A DNA stretch of 33,838 bases from assembly GCA_025201805.1 (NCBI GenBank), contig MU619311.1, positions 122,372-156,209 of the forward strand. Direction: 5' to 3'. A program made the translations under genes and the position numbers. Origin of the DNA: Parasitella parasitica NRRL 2501. Lineage: Eukaryota > Fungi > Mucoromycota. Positions 2,333 through 28,470 of this stretch are shown in pieces. The notes below the pieces were generated by a model. That model ran no database searches, was not told where the DNA came from, and saw nothing but the letters and a program-made list of their open reading frames with translations. How positions within the stretch are numbered: the stretch's first letter is position 1; each line of letters opens with the position of its first letter.

Positions 2333-4064
2333 AGTTTTGTTTTATATTCTGGTGGAAGGAGTGGAAGGGTGATTTGAGGAATAACGTTTAGTTAGAAGCG
2401 ACATTTATATATGATATTTCTGACACAAGAAAACGTGCGTGTTTCTACTCATTAAATATTATTTATTGCCTCAATTTGTCGACTATTCCTCGGATTTTTC
2501 ATCTGGCTCTCTCCGGGTTCTTTGGTGTTACATTCATGTCTGCTTCCACAAGTCTGGACAATGTCATTTTCTTGCTTGAATACATCAACTTTAATATACC
2601 TGTGCCACTTCGTATATTGAAAATTAATTCAATTTATCAATATGCTATATGCTGTGTAATCTGAAAACAGGGGAAAGCAATATTAAGCTCCACTTTATCG
2701 TTTGTAACTTCCGTTTTAAAATGTCTTGTGTAAAAGTTGATTTCTACTTGATGCGATATCAGCCCATGTCCGTATGAATAAAGCAAATAAAACACGTAAC
2801 CAATACATTAGATAATATTGCGTACAACAGATGCTGCGTAAACATCTATCTGATATTTCTAATTAAATATATACCAAATAAACCTGCTTGCTAAATCACC
2901 AATTGGAAGAATCAAAAACGTTGCGGAGCATTTCAAATTAGTTTTCATAGCCTCTTGGTAGAGAGCCTTTAACGGAAGCTGACAGCAAATTGATACTGGC
3001 AGACACAGATTTTCACTAGTATGATGGTTCTGAGAACAAGGCGAGTTTGGAAAAAAGATGTATTTCGTTCGCTTAAAATTTGACAAGGATATTAGACATT
3101 GCAGATTACAAATGCAGACTTGCTTTGAAACATCGGATACTTTTAAACTACTAATGCCTAGTATTGAAGCTGTAAAAAAAGCTGCATGTTATATATTTGG
3201 AAAAGAAATTTACGAGAAAATCGAACATGTAACGAACCCATAAAGCTCATTCCAAGACTTGAAGTTGAGACTCGATAGCACAGCAATCAAAGACACATCT
3301 ATTGGTTGTACATAACTTTTACATTTATGCATATATTTAATGATTTTAATCCCAAGTAGAGTGAGGTGAGTCGAACAATTCGTGTTTGAAGCTCGTGTCA
3401 AGAGTGGATCATCTCATTTCACATAATAGCGACCTATCCAATGTGTTGATTCTAAAATATTGCTGTAAAAAGTCTCTCATCAAGTCTAAATTTAGTCTGG
3501 AAATAATTAAATCTCAAGACTAACTCATCTAAATACTGTTAAGCTTGCCAAATTAGATTTATTTTCGTCATTTTTATTGATATATTAGTTTCTTTGTCTC
3601 TTGATCAGCAAAAAAGATGGAATATCCTTGAAGTGGTATTGCTTTTCTTTTTTTTTTTAAAAAAAAAAGAAAACTTTACTGTGGATTTAAAGGTGCATGG
3701 TACGTCAGATCTATGTTCCCTTATCACTATAGATGTGCTTCTTGTGTTTATTGTTACCAAGTACATGGACTTATGCTCAAATAATGTAACAAATGTCTAG
3801 GAATGACGGTAAATGTACCCCTGTTCCCGCGAGAATATTTTTACATGCAATGGCGCTGAAAAACAATATAGTCATGGAGTCATGAGACTTGATGATATAT
3901 ACCTGAGCACCGCACACAAAAGATTGAACATAGCATCCGGTAAATGACAACATATAACGCCAGATATAGAGCAACAAAGCTGATATTGTACAAAACAAAT
4001 CAAAAGAGTTTTGGTATTGATCATCTACTGACATTCCATTCATTTCAATTATTATTATTATTAT

Positions 4065-4099
<35 letters not shown>

Positions 4100-5862
4100 N
4101 NNNNNNNNNNNNNNGCTAATCTGACACTGTAAGAAAATGTTGTCATGGTATACAGATACTTTTATACGCAGTAAGCATGAGCGCATGTATAAATTTGTCT
4201 TGACGTATGCATGCATGGTGGCTGTTGAGATAATATGATACTATCACTCTTGAATACAATGATGAGTAGTCCATTTATGGTAGTAAGTAACAACAGTAAA
4301 GTTACCGTGTGCACGTATGATTATCTACACATCGCTTGATGACACAGAGATTAATCACCTGTAATTGCATCATGGTCTGTCGCAGCAAGTGCTTTTTGTA
4401 TGATCCATCATAACCAGATCTCTAATGATCTTCTTGAATATTCTTTATAATAATATGTCTTTGAATAACGTTGAACTCAATTCACTCGTAAGTCTTATGT
4501 CAAAAACTTACCTATTTAGTCACAAAAAAACAGACAACGCGCACACACAAGCATACTATTGCGAGGCTGCCGTATTTACTACTCATGTAAACTTTTTCTC
4601 TGAATACATCATTTGAGAGATATGAAAAAAACGTTTGAACATCACGATGGCTATTGAAATGTGATGTGCAGTCTATTGTCGATTTGATTTGCTTCTCGAG
4701 TTTGTAATCATCCTCGTATTATACAGTAATTATCCTTAGGAGATGATTGGATTGCAAATTAGCTTTGGTAAATGTAAACTTTGCTTTTTTCAAAAGGTAA
4801 ACAGTTGTCTGTGAAATGTGCCTGCTGCGATAGGAGATGGCTAGCTACACAATATTACACACGTTATAAAATAGACCACTAAACTCCTCTTTTCTGATTG
4901 TGTGATACAAGTCGCACTATCATGGTATAATTCTCTGCATAGGTGATCCGGATAAGTGATAAGAACGTAACAAATGGGTCGTATCTGTATGGCGTAATGA
5001 CATGGCATCGAGACCCGCCGCATATTTCCAATCTGCAAATTTGAGCTTTATACGGAAATCATCATTTTCGTCATATATAACCTACTAATTCAGAACCCTG
5101 GCATTTAATTATGCATGCATCTTAATTGCACCATCTACATGTATGATTGATGGAATATTGCAATATTATCAATAATACTGTCAAATTAGACCAGTTGTAA
5201 AAGTGGTTTTCTGCCAAGAGCAGCTTAGCATTGAAAAAGGACAATGTAAGCGAATATACGGCGATGCACGAGTCTATCCAGACATTGGCTACAATATGTA
5301 TACTTATTTAAATGCAAAGTGGTCAAGTGAACTATATTGACAAAAAATTAACTGCATTGCATATAACGTGAGTCAATGTAGCGGCCGTGGATGTTCTTGA
5401 CAAAGTGTACATGTGCGCCGTATCTATTTATCCAAAGCTAATAATAAATGCGAATCTTTCTCAAGATGATACCATAGACACCTATTTTACATGATGATCG
5501 ACAAGTACACTTTTTTCGATGCATATTTAGACCTAGTGACATTGTTAATTGACCTATCAGCCATATACATGCAAAAAGAAAAGATTAATAAGGACAATAT
5601 AGCTGCAACTTGAATGGCTTTGCAATTCATCATATGTTAACAGTTATACCACATCATACGCTAGTGGCGTTTCCAACCAAATGTTTTTAATGCGAACCTG
5701 GAGTATTTTTAATATACCCTAAATAAATCGATGCATTGAAGCCGTTCAGATCATGACCTTAATAAAAATAAAAATACAAAAAAAAAAGTATATAAATACA
5801 CAAACACATCCAATACAGTAACCTTTTCATTCATCTTATTTTTTTCCCCACTATATCTCTTT

Positions 5863-21712: not shown

Positions 21713-24073
21713 TTTTTTGTTGAAATAAAATATAAAAGAAATGAAAAGGCAAACAAAGATAAAACGGATGCGGAAGAATTTTATATTTTATTGTATTCAT
21801 ATTTATTTTTAGAATTCATTATATATAGACAAAAGATATTATAACCTTTTCTTGGCGATATATCACAACTTTTCCTTGTTCTGGCTGGGGTTTTTCTCAA
21901 TCTATAAAGATGCATCACACAATAATACTTTCAGCCTCATTGTGCAGCAAATCTTGGAAGTAAGAATCCATGAAATGGCCACCGATGACTTCATTTAATA
22001 CCAAAAAAGCAGAAGAAACAAATAGGGGAACAATAAAACTGCAAGTCTGTCAACTTCAAGTTACGGTATGAGAACTTTGCATTTTTGCTTAACTCTTTAC
22101 GACTGACTAGAACTGCTCAACTGGATTGAGCAGTGGAGAGTAGAATAGTAAATAAGCATAGCGACATCTTTTTAGTATCCGGGATAATGATTATTTGATA
22201 TGCTCTTTAACCATTATCATGGACAAGAAAGAATTAAAACGAAATTCATTCTATTGCGTGGAAACAGACGGGGGAAGATAATAGGTTGCTACGCAGTCGT
22301 AGAGACTATGATCCATGGGAATACAAAAGATCACTGAACTAATGGGTGTAGTGGCTAGTGATAGATTTGCGTTTGCGAGATGTTTTGGGATCAATATTTG
22401 CAAGTAGCTTGTATGCGAACAGCTTGTATTATAATCTTCATGACCTCGTCCAGTTGCCTTTGTATTCTATTTTGCAACTCTCTTTTCATACCCTTCCGCC
22501 TCATAAATTGCGTAGAATCTTTTGCTGATTCCACGACGAGCACAGTTGATGCTTAACGGATATCAATAGGTGAAAGATGTCTTACAGCATGAATTCATTG
22601 TATACAATTTTTATCAAATCGATTCAACGGCAACCTCGTGTTATTACTTATGCTTTGAACTCGTTGTCAATTTCAACCAGGAGACACTATTGATAAATTC
22701 TACCGGACAACATGCACATGAGTAAAATGCCATTTGCATCATACTCTGCAACGATATCCTCATTTCCGTTCGACATCTTTAGAAGAGACCCACATAGAAG
22801 CTTCCATGTCGCTTGAATCAAAAATACTGGGATTTCCATTGTTGAAACGACATCGCATTGCTTCAACTGGAAATCCCCGTCTTTTCTATCGTCTTTATTT
22901 ATTACTTTTATTAATATTTTTTCCTCATGTTTGCTTTGTACGTTTTCAAAGTTATCAACATCAGCAGAAGAATAATCCAGAACGCTTTTTGATTGACCAT
23001 TTTTGATGACCTGTTTTGGAGGAAATTTGGTCGATTAATAGTTTCAGCCCATCAACGCATTATGTCCTGAGAACCCAAGGACCTTTTCAAAATTGAAAAA
23101 TTGCAATGTAATATATTCTTTATTGCAGCTAGAACATACCTTCCGGATTGCGGGCAAACTCCAGTGAATGTGAGTGCAACATACTTTTCTAAGCACCTTT
23201 TTATTACGGAAACATGATCATTGCTATATGAGCACAACTTGATGCGCAAAATCAGTTTTTTTTTCTTCTAAATAATCATAAGTAACAGATATTTAGTCTT
23301 AACTTCTGCTAAGAGAACCGTAGAACTGCAATGCTGTAGAGGTTGTCCAACGAATGTTTTTGATCCTATAGGAAACAGCAGCTAGCTTATTAAAGTTTGA
23401 TGGTAATGGCTCAAATTTTAACACTTCATACAAACTAACATAAATAAATTATAATACAGTGTACAGCTGAGCAAACCTTACATTCACATCATAGTTGCTG
23501 AGTCGTAAGTATGTTACATCATTAGATTGGCGAATCGAAAAATTGAAGAATGAGCGTTCAGCCTGCTGTCGTTCTAACACTCAAAAAGAGAGAAGTGAAT
23601 GGTAGATTTTGGTTGTAATCTTCCGCCGGCAGCATTTGGCTCATCAAAAGAGACCCCAGCAAAGTTAAATGCTTGCAATATGCCACTTTGAAATTGCAAC
23701 AGCATATGCAAGGACTTTAATATTTACTTATCGAATATCATGAAGACAATGATATTTCTCAAAGTATATCTTACTTGGCAATCACTTCCAGTCGGCTTCG
23801 TACCGATTGAGAGAGGCGACACTAAAGATTAGTGTGAGAATGGATATTATGGGTTTTATGGGTTTTGGAGAAGTCATCCACCAACTCTTCATTTTAGGAA
23901 GTCCAGAATTCATTTCTCGACATTTTGAGGATCTCTTTATCTTCACAATAGTCTAGGGTAATCAAGCCCACGTCCTCAAAACATTAAAGGGTGGAAGAGC
24001 AGAGCAAGTAGCATTTAAATCGACACCTGAGTTGCAGGAATCGGAGAGTATTGTTGTAAGATTGATCTCTTTA

Positions 24074-24212
24074 CAGTTGACGAAACTAGGTTGGGCCAAT
24101 GAAAATAAATTTTGGTCATTTCCAAATTGAGTTGGGACACGATTACAAAAATGGGTCACCAATACGAAAATGGGACAACAAGATGAAAATGGGACATGAG
24201 TACGAACATGGA
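24074..24212 (+). repeat. Left TIR (core 24074-24136) plus four 19-bp subterminal repeats
   Basis: Core CAGTTGACGAAACTAGGTTGGGCCAATGAAAATAAATTTTGGTCATTTCCAAATTGAGTTGGG. Units: ACACGATTACAAAAATGGG, TCACCAATACGAAAATGGG, ACAACAAGATGAAAATGGG and the degenerate ACATGAGTACGAACATGGA. Confidence 0.92.
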
Positions 24213-24224
24213 GACAATGTTAGT

Positions 24225-24305
24225 ATCTTTCAGAAGAGTCAGAATTGTTACAGCTTCTTACCTGCAATATCTTTAAGTTGCTGACTCACCGGAGTGAGCA
24301 ACAAC
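24225..24305 (-). ncRNA. Candidate Fanzor omegaRNA scaffold (boundaries uncertain)
   Basis: Minus-strand sequence across the Fanzor stop codon has three stems: GUUGCU-CAC-UCCG-GUG-AGUC-AGCAAC, GAGUCAG (24287-24281) pairing with CUGACUC (24242-24236), and an inner UUGCAG-GUAAGAAG-CUGUAA. The position matches where TnpB/Fanzor omegaRNAs are encoded. Confidence 0.5.
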
Positions 24306-26603
24306 AACCACATTGGAGGTGGCGGTATGTCTTTTGAAGACCTGGGGGCGGCCATTTCCACACCAAATTGATGTGGCAATGGTGAGCATGTTCTTCGAGG
24401 CCATGGCATCGCGATTCCAGTAAATGTTGCAAGTTTTACACTTCAATACCTGATAGATTTTGGTTTCTTCGTTGTCATGGCTTATCTTGAAATTCTCCAG
24501 ATCTTCTTTGAGACAGTTGTTGCAGATCTATGAATAATCGGTTTTAGCTGAAAGTGCAATATGTGAATTATGTGTGTTTTTTCCTTAATAACCTTCGATG
24601 TTTTGAACTCATTAATATCTACAAGTAATAGTTCACCAATTCTTTCTCTTGCTTGTAGTTGCTTGTATATTTTGTTCGAAACACCATGTCTTAAACCTCT
24701 GAACTTTATATGATCTTTGTTTTTTAATCCGTCACCAAAGACCACCAGAGGCATCTTACTTTTGTCACCTACTTCAAAACAAGCCTTGTTTTTTCTGTTG
24801 TAAGTTACAAAAATAACANNNNNNNNNNNNNNNNNNNNNNNNNNNNNNNNNNNNNNNNNNNNNNNNNNNNNNNNNNNNNNNNNNNNNNNNNNNNNNNNNN
24901 NNNNNNNNNNNNNNNNNNNNNNNNNNNNNNNNNNNNNNNNNNNNNNNNNNNNNNNNNNNNNNNNNNNNNNNNNNNNNNNNNNNNNNNNNNNNNNNNNNNN
25001 NNNNNNNNNNNNNNNNNNNNNNNNNNNNGAAGTATCAAAGCCGTAGAAATCAAACAACGTATTCATGAGCTGCAACATGTAGGCTACGTACAGAACAAAT
25101 TGCTCCACAGATGCAGTTTTAGGCGAAGGAATGTCTGTTTCAATCTTTTCAATGCCTAGTTCTTGTTTGTGTTTCTGTTGCTTATTCTTGTTACACTTCC
25201 ACCCATATTATAGTATTCGATTGTCTGGGAAAATTCCGGTCAGGTTCTGGGCATCAATCTTTATGAACCGCCAGTGTAATGAGGGATTTGGGAATAAACT
25301 AAAACGTCTTGGAAGCGGGGGCTTCGTTGAGTCGGCCTTGTCCTTTTGAGCAGCTTGGGTCCTGTTTATATCATCGTATTTGTTGAGGATATACCGTAAT
25401 GCCGGTAAAATTTTGAAGGGTTCATTGTTTAAGCTTTCTTTAGTCAGTGGAAGCGTGGACATGCGATTTTTGACCTCTAAAATCAAAGGATTTAAGAAAC
25501 TTGTAAGATTACTGGCCACATCCGGATCAAATAGGGCAAGAATATCAACAGATACAGATGAAGGTTGGAAATGTGTAAGCACTTGGTCGTATACGTGATT
25601 ATATACCAATTTCTTGATACAGCCGATCTTCGCATCCTAGTTTATGTAATTTTAGTATAACAATTTGAGAAATTGAACATGTATATTGAAGTGCTTGTTA
25701 TTATGGTACTCTGTCTTCAGTGTATATATGTAGTAGTTACATGTGATGTTTTCAAAATTTTCAATATAGTAGTAGTTGTATGTTGTTGCGACAGTCTTGC
25801 ATGCAGTAGACAGAGATTGTCCATAATTCTTTAATCCATTTTCTGAAACAAACAAGCTACCATTTGTAGTAGCAGACAAATTAACAAAAGAGCTCGCAAG
25901 TTGATTCACATCTAGGTTCTGGCCTGCAGGTCGTTCCTTTTTCGTATCTTTGTAAGCCTGCAGATTTGGCTTTACTGTATCTGCGCTGCCCTTAATAACT
26001 CTTGAAATAGTATACCAAAAATTTTGATCAAAGAAGCCATTTGTCAGCTTGGTTGGATGTTGCACAATAAAATGGTTTACAAATAGTTGAGCTTTGAACA
26101 AGACTTCACGGACAAAGCTTGATATGTCCTTGACTTTTTTTTAAAGCATTGGCTTTGTTTGGAGTATCATTACAAAGAGTTTCAAATGGGACAGAGAGAG
26201 TGTATCTTTGATGGGATCCAAGTCTGATTTGTAGACGTCCCGGTAGCTTTGGATTATAGTTTTTTGCATTGGGAACTTCTTGCAGAGCTATGCCCTTCCT
26301 CTTGACAAGAGCTACAATTATTCTTAGAGGATGATGCTGCTGAAGTACTAGCTTGGCGACTTTTCTTTGCATTCCTTTTTGCTGTTATTAAAGCAGAAGA
26401 ATCATTCCTCTTGGTAGCTTTAAATGCATTAGCTTGTAAAACCTTGGAATCACATAAAAAGTTTCTTTTTACTTACATGTTCTCTTTGGGGTCTGAGTGG
26501 TAGAGTTTTCCTTCTTGTTATCAGATTCGACCTCCTCTAGCTTTGTACGTTTCTTGAGGATGATGAACTTCTCCACTTCAGGGTAAATAGGTATGCGTGG
26601 CAT
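24273..26603 (-). pseudogene. Fanzor1 (eukaryotic TnpB/Cas12-related RNA-guided endonuclease), disrupted copy
   Basis: Removing intron 24592-24528 gives MPLVVFGDG...LLLVDINEFKTSK|ICNNC...IYQVLKCKTCNIYWNRDAMASKNMLTIA...GRPQVFKR...* (stop 24275-24273). This contains the RuvC-II Glu, a CxxC...CxxC zinc ribbon and the RuvC-III NRD. Upstream pieces: FKAQLFVNHFI, YYIENFE, RFSLFPNPSLHWRFIKID, EYYNMGG and GIEKIETDIPSPKT...LFDFY, plus an N-terminal CSSCQEEGHSSARSSQC knuckle. Frameshifts and an N gap (24819-25028) are present, RuvC-I is not found, and the 5' end is uncertain. Confidence 0.88.
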
Positions 26604-27252
26604 TGGTCAATTGAAAAGAAGTAAAAAGAGTTCAAGACAACATTTGTCTGTCAACTAGATCAAATCTTGTCAACCCGATCGAGAGATTTACACTTGAGAC
26701 AACTCCGAAAGGGAATGCACACACATGGATCCCACCTGTTGATATATTCTCTAATCCAATTACTGATATCGCCCGGCTGTCAATGTTGTTATATTGTATA
26801 TCAAGGCCAGACTCTGTTTTTAATAAATTATAAGTACCTAGCTAGTTTTCATTGAGAATATCCTCATTCAGATTTTAACTGAAATGAATCTATACAAAGC
26901 TTTCGAAGTACTACTTGTCAATCTACTTTTCTATCTATTTACCAACTTAATTAATCAACAAATCTGTTTGATTTTTTCGATCGCGATACTGATGTATATC
27001 ATACTTTTTTTTTTCTTTTTTGGTAAGAGCACCCATTTTGGCATTGGGTATAACAATAATAGAAAAACAAGATAACATATTCAATTCATTTTTAGACCTG
27101 AGCAGTTTTGACTTTGGCACTTGGATCATAAAGTACTAGAATATGATACAAGTTCTATAAAGGGTTGCTGTTTTCAGGGCTGCGCCCTTAAATTGAACCA
27201 AGAAAAAAACCCTTTGAATCTGTTCGGTATAGTTCCACAGTTGTGTTCGTGT

Positions 27253-27409
27253 CCCGTATTCTCTTATGTGTCCCATTTTCATGTTGATGGCCCACTTTCA
27301 TATTAACGTCCCATTTTCATCTTGTTGTCCCATTTTCGTATTCGTGACCCAACTCAATTTGGAAATGACCAAATTTATTTTCGTTAGCCCAACCTAGTTT
27401 CGTCAACTG
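27253..27409 (-). repeat. Right TIR (core 27348-27409) plus five 19-bp subterminal repeats
   Basis: Reverse complement reads CAGTTGACGAAACTAGGTTGGGCTAACGAAAATAAATTTGGTCATTTCCAAATTGAGTTGGG. Units: TCACGAATACGAAAATGGG, ACAACAAGATGAAAATGGG, ACGTTAATATGAAAGTGGG, CCATCAACATGAAAATGGG, ACACATAAGAGAATACGGG. Confidence 0.92.
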
Positions 27410-28470
27410 TAATATCAACAAACTAAAAAAGTACTTGACTCTTAAATTTAAAATAATCATCACTGTCTCTTGTTTTAAATGCGTCAGTTTCTTTTTGGTT
27501 TCTCTGTCTGTTCTCTTAATCTGTCCTTTGCCATAATCTTAAACTACCAATAATGATGATAAAACGTGAAGTTGGTATTGGATAAAATCAACCGGGTCTA
27601 TTGCATTAGAGTCTCCATAATAGTGCAATGAGTTAAATGGCAGAAAAGGTTATTTAAATCTTCAATCAATTTTGATAATAAAACTTCGATAAATGACTGA
27701 AGCCTGTTCATCGTATTTCGTGATGATTTTAGTTCAAGTGAATTTACGTTTGCATAACAGCTACATGAGTCGTGACATAGTTTGCTTCATTCTAAAAATT
27801 CTTGGCTGAATTTTACTGACAAGATTGGGATTATTGTCCAATAACAGATATAACCGATAATTCAATGAACAAACAGGAAAATTCAGTTACATATAACTTT
27901 TATATACGATACTTGCCGGTTAAATCATCAAAACAACTCAGTATTGGTTGTATCAATATGGATGTCATCGTTTTGTTTGTTGGCTGCACCAAGTCTAGAC
28001 GGTTGTAAGGGTTATTACTGTTTTGCTATTCCAGAAATCTTATTTGAACCTTTAAAGTGAATAAGGGAACAAATCGCTAACCCTTAATTTTACATCATTT
28101 TTTTTATTACATTGAGGAATGCAAAATAAAATATTCATAATGATGCGCATTTTATAGATCTCAAGCAATTTTTATTATATGAAGTAACATATACTGCTGT
28201 TTGATTTTCTGTTAATGCAAAATAAAAATGGGCTTTGTTGTCGACTACCCCCCCCCCATTGAAATAAAAAAGGGAAAACTCTAATTAAAAGCCTGGTAAC
28301 ACATCTGAAATAAGGGGGATTCTACCATAAACAAGCCTCACTCATTGTTGCACTCATTCAAATCAATGTTACACATTTGATTAAAACTAAAAAAACATAA
28401 ATTCTCTTTTTTCTTTTTCCTTTCACTGCTACTCCTTTATATTCTTTATTCATCTTTCTTTGAACACACC

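What the first reader, a model, noticed from the sequence alone, without database searches (positions are those of the whole stretch)
24074..27409. Fanzor1 RNA-guided nuclease cassette inside a transposase-less, TA-targeting TIR transposon
Seen in sequence: both element ends are intact (TA|CAGTTGACG...CGTCAACTG|TA), and the only recognisable cargo is a spliced minus-strand gene with TnpB-type RuvC-II (INEFKTSK), a CxxC/CxxC zinc ribbon and RuvC-III (WNRD). Established: Fanzors are eukaryotic OMEGA-family relatives of TnpB/Cas12, use an omegaRNA encoded downstream of the ORF, and occur in diverse DNA transposons including in Mucorales. Inference: this is a non-autonomous Tc1/mariner-like Fanzor family mobilised in trans, and possibly an undescribed lineage. 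The ORF track shows it only as unrelated fragments.
Basis: partly seen in the sequence, partly recalled or inferred. Interest (0 to 1): 0.92.

Follow-up and report, generated by a model that had tools for sequence, protein, structure and literature searches.

The report
Dead Fanzor1 transposon copy in Parasitella
This is a broken copy of a roughly 3.85-kb cut-and-paste transposon that carries an RNA-guided nuclease gene (Fanzor1) but no transposase; this kind of element has been known in pin moulds since 2013, and the family is shared almost unchanged between a parasitic mould and Mucor species.

Summary
Window 24074-27409 is a TA-flanked element with about 140-bp inverted ends. A spliced minus-strand gene carries the Fanzor1/TnpB motifs RuvC-II, C4 zinc ribbon and RuvC-III.

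The family has about 29 copies in this 32.8-Mb genome. All 18 copies with both tips readable have TA on each side at unrelated sites.

The window copy is dead:
- A 410-bp deletion removes the RuvC-I aspartate.
- Two 1-bp insertions and a 4-bp deletion shift the frame.
- A 16-bp deletion removes a splice donor.

Other copies bridge the N gap collinearly with 246-248 bp (216 bp in one). That stretch holds a K/R-rich exon end and the start of an intron.

No transposase fits in the element. One Tc1-like element elsewhere shares the tip and the subterminal 12-mer, so it is only a candidate partner.

A complete copy in Mucor flavus is 95% identical in DNA, while an orthologous host gene is 68% identical. 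This indicates horizontal transfer.

Such transposase-less TA/long-TIR Fanzor1 elements were described in Mucorales in 2013, and another Fanzor1 of this species has a solved structure. It is a new member of a known kind.

Earlier scan notes on other DNA of this genome propose that splicing builds the guide RNA. The splice signals exist here, but I could not test them with reads.

The parts
24072..24073 (.). TA target-site dinucleotide, gene-proximal side
   Evidence: all 18 copies with both tips readable have TA on each side.
24074..24216 (-). Gene-proximal terminal inverted repeat. Tip is CAGTTGACGAAACTAGGTTGGG; 19-bp subterminal repeats (GAAAATGGGACA) lie at about 24137-24196.
   Evidence: I1-I5, D2; 78 tips against 0 for the control.
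24086..24261 (-). Candidate 176-nt spliceosomal intron in the 3' UTR. Donor CAG|GTAAGA at 24261-24256, TACTAAC at 24225-24219, first downstream AG at 24087-24086. Splicing would leave 12 nt of the tip plus flank. Not tested with RNA.
   Evidence: Sequence. Signals invariant in 18 copies. AG-free 131 nt: P=0.008, or 0.05 after collapsing the repeats. Prompted by earlier scan notes.
24263..24420 (-). Structured RNA stretch over the ORF 3' end and stop codon; candidate omegaRNA scaffold
   Evidence: MFE -50.9 kcal/mol, z=-2.47. The TIR stretch is unstructured, z=+1.22.
24273..24527 (-). Exon 5 plus stop codon: zinc ribbon CNNC...CKTC, RuvC-III WNRD, C-terminal GRPQVF
   Evidence: SpuFz1 8GKH C-terminus, E=1.6e-4. 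E=9e-16 to P0097..
24528..24592 (-). Intron 5 (65 nt, GTTATT...CATAG)
   Evidence: Sequence. The same junction is used in the public models P0162, P0160 and P0161.
24593..24794 (-). Exon 4: ...MPLVVFGDG...LLLVDINEFKTSK (RuvC-II glutamate beside the TS motif)
   Evidence: E=1e-15 to P0097..
24795..25028 (-). 3' end of intron 4 (24795-24818), then the assembly gap (24819-25028). In other copies the gap is 246-248 bp and holds the K/R-rich end of exon 3b and the intron-4 donor.
25029..25223 (-). Remnant of exon 3b (IEYYNMGG...GIEKIETDIPSPKTAS...FDFYGFDTS), with a 4-bp deletion near 25184
25223..25224 (-). Junction of a 410-bp internal deletion. Lost: intron 3 and the RuvC-I motif TVDPGRRD, both present in L027, L036 and L041.
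25224..25636 (-). Remnant of exon 3a (DAKIGCIKK...PLPRRFSLFPNPSLHWRFIKID...)
25637..25705 (-). Remnant of intron 2. A 16-bp deletion at about 25705 removed its GTAAGT donor.
25706..26417 (-). Exon 2: CCHC knuckle CSSCQEEGHSSARSSQC and the N-terminal helical region. Two window-specific +1 insertions in A-runs at about 26265 and 26142.
   Evidence: E=1e-19 to P0097.
26418..26476 (-). Intron 1 (59 nt, GTAAGT...AAAG)
   Evidence: Sequence; same junction as in the M. flavus model P0001.
26477..26603 (-). Exon 1 (MPRIPIYPEVEKF...)
26604..27266 (-). Non-coding 5' region of the element, presumed promoter. About 60 bp is missing at 27105|27106 relative to other copies. No ORF with a transposase domain.
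27267..27409 (+). Distal terminal inverted repeat
27410..27411 (.). TA target-site dinucleotide, distal side

Best explanation
Window 24074-27409 is a decayed copy of a multi-copy, roughly 3.85-kb non-autonomous Tc1-like DNA transposon of Parasitella parasitica. Its only gene is a six-exon Fanzor1 (TnpB-like, RuvC plus zinc-ribbon) nuclease.

Shown:
- The element's anatomy, copy number and TA flanks.
- The Fanzor1 identity of the gene.
- The lesions that make this copy non-functional.
- The lack of a transposase.
- Near-identity with copies in Mucor species.

Inferred from established knowledge of Tc1/mariner and OMEGA systems:
- A Tc1-family DDE transposase made elsewhere binds the GAAAATGGGACA subterminal repeats and cuts and pastes the element into TA sites.
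- In intact copies, the Fanzor protein loads an omegaRNA transcribed from the 3' end of its gene towards the gene-proximal end. The guide of that RNA is the host flank.
- The protein then cuts element-free copies of the site, so that repair restores or spreads the element.

The family moved horizontally between Parasitella, a mycoparasite of Mucorales, and Mucor species.
For: Element:
- TIRs and repeats.
- 78 tips against 0 for the control.
- TA on each side of all 18 copies with both tips readable, at unrelated sites.
- Star-like tree with a median end branch of 0.011.

Fanzor1 identity:
- P0162, which equals window exons 4 and 5, scores 34.4 bits on PF07282 (cut-off 26.3).
- Exon 5 matches the SpuFz1 C-terminus at E=1.6e-4.
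- P0161 matches SpuFz1 at E=3.4e-10 over two stretches, including DPG.
- Four exon pieces are collinear with the 690-aa paralog P0097, E=1e-15 to 2e-29.
- Foldseek's best hits are SpuFz (3.5e-8), PpFz and GtFz, followed by Cas12f and TnpB.

Dead copy: lesions listed against L041 and L027.

No transposase:
- The complete 3857-bp copy L041 is filled by the gene plus about 860 bp of 5' and about 200 bp of 3' non-coding DNA.
- No DDE_3 hit lies inside a copy, except a nested insertion on C185.

Candidate partner: C125 element L058:315-5634.
- It has TA flanks, a 21/24 tip match and the same subterminal 12-mer.
- It carries HTH_Tnp_Tc3_2 plus a near-threshold DDE_3 match (28.0 bits, cut-off 28.6).
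- Its ORF has one frameshift.

Horizontal transfer:
- 95.2% identity over 3120 nt to the M. flavus copy.
- The neighbouring host OSBP gene is 68% identical and ribosomal L23 exons 87%.
- The same 90% protein cluster holds M. circinelloides 1006PhL and M. atramentarius.
Against: - No empty site was seen, so TA could formally be part of the element rather than a duplication.
- No transposase with matching ends is shown to be intact. The only candidate is single-copy and frameshifted.
- No copy in this assembly can be read end to end, because almost all have large N gaps. An intact Fanzor gene in this genome is therefore not demonstrated.
- dN/dS between copies is 0.25-0.99. Only the catalytic exons look constrained.
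- No RNA data could be laid, so expression, the introns and the omegaRNA all rest on sequence signals and public gene models.
- The AF2 model is only moderate (pLDDT 70, pTM 0.37, TM about 0.30 to SpuFz).
Confidence: 0.88

Rival explanations
1. The element belongs to another TA-targeting or TA-tipped superfamily (pogo, Zator, Sola or a new one), not to Tc1. It would be moved by a different transposase, or the TA would be part of the element with no duplication.
For: No empty site was found. Eleven other Tc1-like transposase families sampled in the genome have unrelated ends. The one matching element shares only the 24-nt tip (21/24) and a 12-mer motif; blastn found no longer similarity.
Against: CAGT tips with TA are the Tc1 hallmark (established knowledge). 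The only transposase found between related ends carries HTH_Tnp_Tc3_2 plus a near-threshold DDE_3 match. Bao & Jurka class equivalent Fanzor1 elements as Mariner/Tc1.
Confidence: 0.08
2. The near-identity with Mucor flavus and M. circinelloides reflects vertical descent under strong constraint, or contamination of assemblies, and not horizontal transfer.
For: Only two host loci were compared. The catalytic exons show some constraint, with dN/dS of 0.25-0.40.
Against: Non-coding parts of the element are as similar as the coding parts: 92-97% across TIRs and the 5' region. Element dS is 0.03-0.10, while the syntenic host gene is only 68% identical. The copies sit in long host contigs with different TA sites in each species. 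The M. flavus copy falls inside the Parasitella polytomy.
Confidence: 0.05
3. The window copy is intact, and the apparent lesions are assembly errors of a collapsed repeat.
For: The two +1 insertions lie in A-runs. The assembly handles this repeat badly, with N gaps in nearly every copy.
Against: The 410-bp and 16-bp deletions lie in ordinary sequence inside contiguous contig stretches, not at gap edges. The public annotation calls only a 138-aa protein here.
Confidence: 0.05

Closest known systems
ROr-3 (Rhizopus oryzae) and SPu-1 (Spizellomyces punctatus) Fanzor1 elements of Bao & Jurka 2013 (PMC3627910, Additional file 1)
   Same: Multi-copy fungal elements with TA duplications and TIRs (133 bp in ROr-3). 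Each carries a Fanzor1 gene with introns and no transposase. They are treated as Mariner/Tc1-type and moved in trans.
   Different: A different protein family. None of six diagnostic peptides or the tip sequence of this family occurs in the held supplement text, parts of which were cut when stored. This element is longer (3.85 kb). Its protein is estimated at about 800 aa from summed exon lengths, not computed from a joined model. It has five coding introns and an N-terminal CCHC knuckle.
SpuFz1, Spizellomyces punctatus Fanzor1 (PDB 8GKH, 9CEU-9CEZ)
   Same: Best sequence and fold match. DPG RuvC-I, E-x-K-T-S RuvC-II, C4 zinc ribbon, YWNRD RuvC-III and the GRPxVF tail all align. SPu elements also have TA duplications.
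   Different: Only about 20% identity. The N-terminal half has no detectable sequence match in the PDB. SpuFz1 is intronless (one exon in Bao & Jurka's table).
PpFz1, Parasitella parasitica Fanzor1 (PDB 9CF0/9CF1; Xu et al. 2024, PMC11423790)
   Same: Same host species. A Fanzor1 shown to cut DNA in vitro. The authors also raise transposon-mediated transfer during mycoparasitism.
   Different: A different paralogous family. There is no phmmer match, and the Foldseek E-value is only 4.9e-3 at 16% identity.
Bacterial IS200/IS605 TnpB with omegaRNA
   Same: Same RuvC plus zinc-ribbon core. The presumed logic is the same: a guide RNA from the element's end targets the element-free site. This is inferred here.
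   Different: Here the gene has spliceosomal introns and an NLS-like run, and it rides in a eukaryotic cut-and-paste TIR element moved by an unrelated DDE transposase.

Membership tests
Fanzor1 (eukaryotic TnpB-like OMEGA nuclease) | RuvC-I aspartate (D in the DPG motif) | tested here: not met
   The window copy lost it in the 410-bp deletion at 25223|25224. The family has it: TVDPGRRD in L027, L041, P0160 and P0161, aligned to VIDPNKRD of SpuFz1. The family is therefore a member; this copy is a pseudogene.
Fanzor1 (eukaryotic TnpB-like OMEGA nuclease) | Acidic RuvC-II residue next to the [TS][TS] motif, followed by a C4 zinc ribbon (Pfam PF07282) | tested here: met
   DINEFKTSK|ICNNC...CKTC in window exons 4 and 5. 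P0162, which equals these exons, scores 34.4 bits on PF07282 against a cut-off of 26.3.
Fanzor1 (eukaryotic TnpB-like OMEGA nuclease) | RuvC-III RD motif and Fanzor1-type C-terminus | tested here: met
   IYWNRDAMASKNMLTIATSIWCGNGRPQVFKR aligns to SpuFz1 residues 995-1027 at E=1.6e-4.
Fanzor1 (eukaryotic TnpB-like OMEGA nuclease) | Fold of the RuvC/TNB core like solved Fanzor, TnpB or Cas12f structures | tested here: met
   AF2 model of family member P0161 has pLDDT 70. The Foldseek hits with E at or below 0.001 are SpuFz chains (E 3.5e-8 to 2.3e-7, probability 1.00), then PpFz and GtFz, with Cas12f, Fanzor2 and TnpB at non-significant E-values. TM-scores are low, about 0.30.
Fanzor1 (eukaryotic TnpB-like OMEGA nuclease) | omegaRNA encoded at the 3' end of the gene, with its guide at the element boundary | tested here: inconclusive
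   The ORF 3' end folds better than shuffles (z=-2.47), while the TIR stretch does not (z=+1.22). No Rfam family matched. No RNA reads could be laid.
Fanzor1 (eukaryotic TnpB-like OMEGA nuclease) | RNA-guided DNA cleavage | not testable with these tools
   This needs biochemistry on an intact copy.
Tc1/mariner superfamily, non-autonomous member | TA target-site duplication | tested here: met
   TA on each side of all 18 copies with both tips readable, with unrelated flanks. Caveat: no empty site was available.
Tc1/mariner superfamily, non-autonomous member | Terminal inverted repeats with a Tc1-type CAGT tip and internal transposase-binding repeats | tested here: met
   The role of the 19-bp repeats as binding sites is inferred.
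Tc1/mariner superfamily, non-autonomous member | DD(E/D) transposase encoded in the element | tested here: not met
   None in the complete copy L041:4137-7993 or in any readable copy. The element is therefore non-autonomous, not a standard Tc1.
Tc1/mariner superfamily, non-autonomous member | A transposase-bearing element with matching ends in the same genome | tested here: inconclusive
   L058:315-5634 (C125) has a 21/24 tip match, the same 12-mer motif and a Tc1-like transposase with one frameshift. It is single-copy.

The most novel reading that the evidence does not exclude
In this family the guide RNA would be made by the spliceosome. A canonical donor (CAG|GTAAGA) lies 11 nt after the stop codon. 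A TACTAAC box follows, and then 131 nt of TIR without a single AG. Together these would remove 176 nt (24086-24261), which is almost the whole gene-proximal TIR. That would join the structured RNA at the ORF 3' end to the last 12 nt of the element and the host flank. The signals are invariant in 18 copies. A sister Fanzor family with related ends has the same AG-free zone. The transposase-bearing relative has five AGs in the corresponding stretch. Earlier scan notes report this splice for other Fanzor families of this genome. I found no paper describing it.
Probability: 0.3. Interest if true: 0.75.

Novelty: new member of a known kind. Interest (0 to 1): 0.33.

Why it matters
As given, the finding is ordinary. 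Fanzor1 genes in TA-flanked, transposase-less TIR elements of Mucorales have been catalogued since 2013. Another Fanzor1 from this same species has been solved and shown to cut DNA. This copy is dead.

Two side results have some value:
- The family is about 95% identical between Parasitella parasitica, a mould that fuses with Mucor hosts, and Mucor flavus. M. circinelloides and M. atramentarius hold members of the same 90%-identity protein cluster. This is a concrete case for the transposon transfer that Xu et al. 2024 only speculated about.
- The family carries a clean set of splice signals that could cut the long TIR out of the guide-RNA precursor. If RNA data confirm it, this would explain how a Fanzor can use a guide next to a 140-bp transposase-binding end.

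Tried and rejected
- Read laying. I therefore have no data on expression, introns, empty sites in other isolates or the content of the gap.
- Spliced model. I did not send a joined model to any tool. I searched exons by reference and used the natural public proteins P0160-P0162 instead.
- PDB phmmer. The 320-aa middle piece and exon 4 alone found nothing.
- Pfam. Single exon pieces gave only a sub-threshold PF07282 hit. Pfam found nothing in the N-terminal two thirds.
- Empty site. Both 400-bp flanks are unique in the genome.
- Bao & Jurka supplement. Neither diagnostic peptides nor the tip sequence occur in the held text, some of which was cut when stored. I cannot say whether Repbase already holds this family.
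- Other transposases. Twenty-three further Tc1-like transposase loci have no similar ends, apart from a Fanzor copy's own tip at the nested C185 insertion.
- Rfam. Only chance-level matches on the opposite strand.
- Further fetching.
- dN/dS. Comparison between copies is too noisy to show selection.
- Earlier findings. Searches by sequence and by some word sets gave nothing.
Full report
**Observation.** Window 24074-27409 begins with CAGTTGACGAAACTAGG and ends with its reverse complement, each next to TA. Inverted similarity extends about 140 bp. It includes four or five 19-bp subterminal repeats with the core GAAAATGGGACA at each end. On the minus strand the three-frame translation shows ...LLLVDINEFKTSK, then a GT...AG interval of 65 nt. 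After it come ICNNC...(22 aa)...CKTCNIYWNRD...GRPQVFKRH... and a stop at 24273-24275.

**More than chance.** The 24-nt tip, allowing three mismatches, occurs 78 times in the 32.8-Mb genome against 0 for the reversed control. About 57 of these ends carry this family's tip, which means about 29 copies. The first 745 bp of the element match more than 20 places at 93-99% identity. In all 18 copies with both tips readable, the tips abut TA on each side and the flanks are unrelated. Paired ends lie 3.6-3.9 kb apart. Nearly all copies hold large N gaps, so this short-read assembly did not resolve the repeat.

**The assembly gap.** Copies L031, L032 and L033 join the sequences on the two sides of 24819-25028 with 248 bp. 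The Mucor flavus copy joins them with 246 bp, and L036 with 216 bp. The sides are therefore collinear parts of one element. In the readable copies the missing stretch encodes ...SKVRWLNYLSSQQVIEESVNILINGGKKYNKGKRKKTRANRKRRRKNR...TRSKR. That is the end of exon 3b with an NLS-like run. The 5' part of a 68-nt intron follows, whose 3' end (TAACTTACAACAG) is visible at 24795-24818. The two sides are in different frames there. The ORF that seems to run through the N is an artefact of a gap length divisible by three. What this copy itself holds in the gap is unknown.

**Which organism.** Members of a 90%-identity protein cluster are annotated in Parasitella parasitica on contigs of 201480, 170121, 236291, 113850, 43492 and 156209 bp. 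These are exactly the lengths of C53, C68, C36, C108 and C185, and the last matches the end coordinate of the window's contig C75. P0162 (KAI8640236.1, 138 aa, 'hypothetical protein') is identical to the window's exons 4 and 5 joined at TSK|ICNNC. The genome is therefore P. parasitica. This is an inference from those matches.

**What the gene is.** I did not send a joined model to any tool. I searched exons by reference and used natural public proteins.
- Exon 5 alone matches the C-terminus of SpuFz1 (PDB 8GKH) at E=1.6e-4 and, weakly, mimivirus Fanzor2.
- P0162 reaches 34.4 bits on Pfam PF07282 (Cas12f1-like TNB; cut-off 26.3).
- P0161, a 346-aa member of the same cluster from M. circinelloides 1006PhL, matches SpuFz1 at E=3.4e-10 in two stretches. 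One holds TVDPGRR against VIDPNKRD (RuvC-I). The other covers RuvC-II, the zinc ribbon and RuvC-III.
- An AF2 model of P0161 (pLDDT 70, pTM 0.37) finds SpuFz first (E=3.5e-8). PpFz and GtFz follow, then Cas12f, Fanzor2 and TnpB. TM-scores are low, about 0.30, so this supports the call without being strong on its own.
- Four exon pieces align collinearly with P0097, a 690-aa M. flavus paralog that passes PF07282. The alignment includes a shared N-terminal CX2CX4HX7C knuckle.
- A HMMER scan of 1.84 billion representatives with the 320-aa middle piece found 296 relatives. Those I looked up are all mucoralean: Mucor, Parasitella, Cokeromyces, Gilbertella and Apophysomyces.

**State of the window copy.** I aligned it to the complete M. 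flavus copy (L041:4137-7993, 3857 bp, TA-flanked, no N) and to L027. The window copy has these lesions:
- Two private +1 insertions in A-runs of exon 2, at about 26265 and 26142.
- A 16-bp deletion that removes the GTAAGT donor of intron 2, at about 25705.
- A 410-bp deletion at 25223|25224 that removes intron 3 and the RuvC-I motif.
- A 4-bp deletion at about 25184.
- About 60 bp missing in the 5' non-coding part.

It is a pseudogene. L027 has one nonsense codon, and L041 has frameshifts of its own. No copy in this assembly can be read end to end. Several 3' halves are open and annotated. dN/dS between copies ranges from 0.25 in the catalytic exons to about 1, as expected for copies that decay after insertion.

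**No transposase; a candidate partner.** The complete copy is filled by the gene (about 2.8 kb with five coding introns) plus about 860 bp upstream and about 200 bp downstream. Nothing else of any size is open. The genome has more than 170 DDE_3 matches. None lies inside a copy, except a nested Tc1-like insertion in the C185 copy. Of 24 Tc1-like loci inspected, only the C125 element (L058:315-5634, TA-flanked) has related ends. Its tip matches 21 of 24 nt, and it has the same GAAAGTGGGACA/GAAAATGGGTCA subterminal motif. It encodes a Tc1-like transposase (HTH_Tnp_Tc3_2 plus a near-threshold DDE_3 match) with one frameshift. This is a lead, not a demonstrated partner. A second Fanzor family of about 4.4 kb with the tip CAGTCGACG shares about 77% of the 140-bp TIR. 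That suggests one transposase lineage serves several Fanzor cargos.

**Horizontal transfer.** The window copy and the M. flavus copy are 95.2% identical over 3120 nt, including non-coding parts. The M. flavus copy falls inside the unresolved radiation of Parasitella copies. The host genes that flank the M. flavus insertion have syntenic orthologues on Parasitella contig C28. The oxysterol-binding-protein gene is only 68% identical over 2.8 kb, and ribosomal L23 exons are 87% identical. The spacing there also leaves no room for the element. Horizontal transfer is the economical reading. It is common for Tc1/mariner elements in Mucoromycotina (bioRxiv 10.1101/2025.06.16.659975). P. parasitica fuses with its mucoralean hosts, and Xu et al. 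2024 speculate on Fanzor-linked transfer.

**Likely mechanism.** The first step is inferred from Tc1/mariner and OMEGA biology. A Tc1-family transposase made in trans moves the element between TA sites. In intact copies, Fanzor with an omegaRNA from the gene's 3' end would cut element-free sites that match the flank-derived guide, which favours retention or spread.

The RNA over the ORF end folds better than shuffles (z=-2.47), while the 200 nt of TIR downstream do not (z=+1.22). Eleven nt after the stop there is CAG|GTAAGA, then TACTAAC. The next AG comes only at CCTAG, 12 nt from the tip, after 131 nt without one. The chance of that is P=0.008 by shuffling, or 0.05 after collapsing the repeats. 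These signals are invariant in 18 copies, although so is most of the neighbourhood. The sister Fanzor family shows the same AG-free zone, whereas the transposase-bearing C125 element has five AGs in the corresponding stretch.

Earlier scan notes on other DNA of this genome (s1-688513, s1-688532 and others) state that such a splice is seen in transcripts of other Fanzor families. I keep it as the novel case and not as a finding.

**Comparison with what is known.** Bao & Jurka 2013 (PMC3627910) defined Fanzor1 and listed TA-flanked elements with and without Mariner transposases in Mucorales and chytrids. Examples are ROr-3 (2862 bp, 16 copies, 133-bp TIR, TA, no transposase) and SPu-1. Jiang et al. 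2023 (PMC10530073) report Mariner/Tc1 associations and intron gain. PpFz1 of P. parasitica is solved and active, but it is a different family. This family's peptides are absent from the held part of the 2013 supplement. The verdict is a new member of a known kind, seen here as a dead copy. The scan has met Fanzor elements in this genome before, on other DNA.

Noticed in passing
L054-L057 (G000 C39:33219-37625, C42:125456-129829, C56:81368-87244, C9:390610-394996): A second Fanzor-carrying family of about 4.4 kb with tip TA|CAGTCGACGAAACTAGG. Its TIR is about 77% like this family's. It encodes a different Fanzor (GLDPGIRD, EYYQLCGF).
   Followed up: partly
L058:315-5634 (G000 C125:67264-72583): A 5.3-kb TA-flanked element with a related tip and the same subterminal 12-mer. 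It holds a Tc1-like transposase with one frameshift, other DDE_3 fragments and two unexplained ORFs (3886-4518 and 4606-5226) with no Pfam match.
   Followed up: partly
G000 C6:288606-288788 and C9:221993-222213 (L059, L060): Pairs of TIR tips only 183 and 221 bp apart. These are MITE-like derivatives of the sister TIR family.
   Followed up: no
L061:7550-8885 (G000 C185): A Tc1-like element (37% identical transposase N-terminus) is nested in the TIR region of another copy of this Fanzor family.
   Followed up: no
L076:5635-5865 (Mucor flavus, paralog P0097): After the stop codon of this independent Fanzor family come GTATGT, ACTAAC and CCAG|GTAAGC, the last exactly at the inner edge of the 92-bp TIR. 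A CCCAG then lies 8 nt from the tip. This could be a one-step or recursive removal of the TIR from the transcript. Untested.
   Followed up: partly
P0011, P0012 (Mucor circinelloides gene models): Public gene models fuse an unrelated N-terminal part to fragments of this Fanzor (RuvC-I region, or a C-terminus with internal deletions). These are either mis-annotations or exonised transposon pieces.
   Followed up: no
window 26257-26330 (-) and P0097 residues 63-79: A conserved CX2CX4HX7C knuckle lies near the N-terminus of both Fanzor families. Pfam zf-CCHC is only sub-threshold (E=0.18).
   Followed up: partly
G000 C28:127055-134006: This is the syntenic orthologue of the M. flavus insertion site (L23 and oxysterol-binding-protein genes). 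The spacing leaves no room for the element, so it is a cross-species 'empty' locus.
   Followed up: no
window 4100-4114: A second, 15-N assembly gap in the window.
   Followed up: no
   Followed up: no
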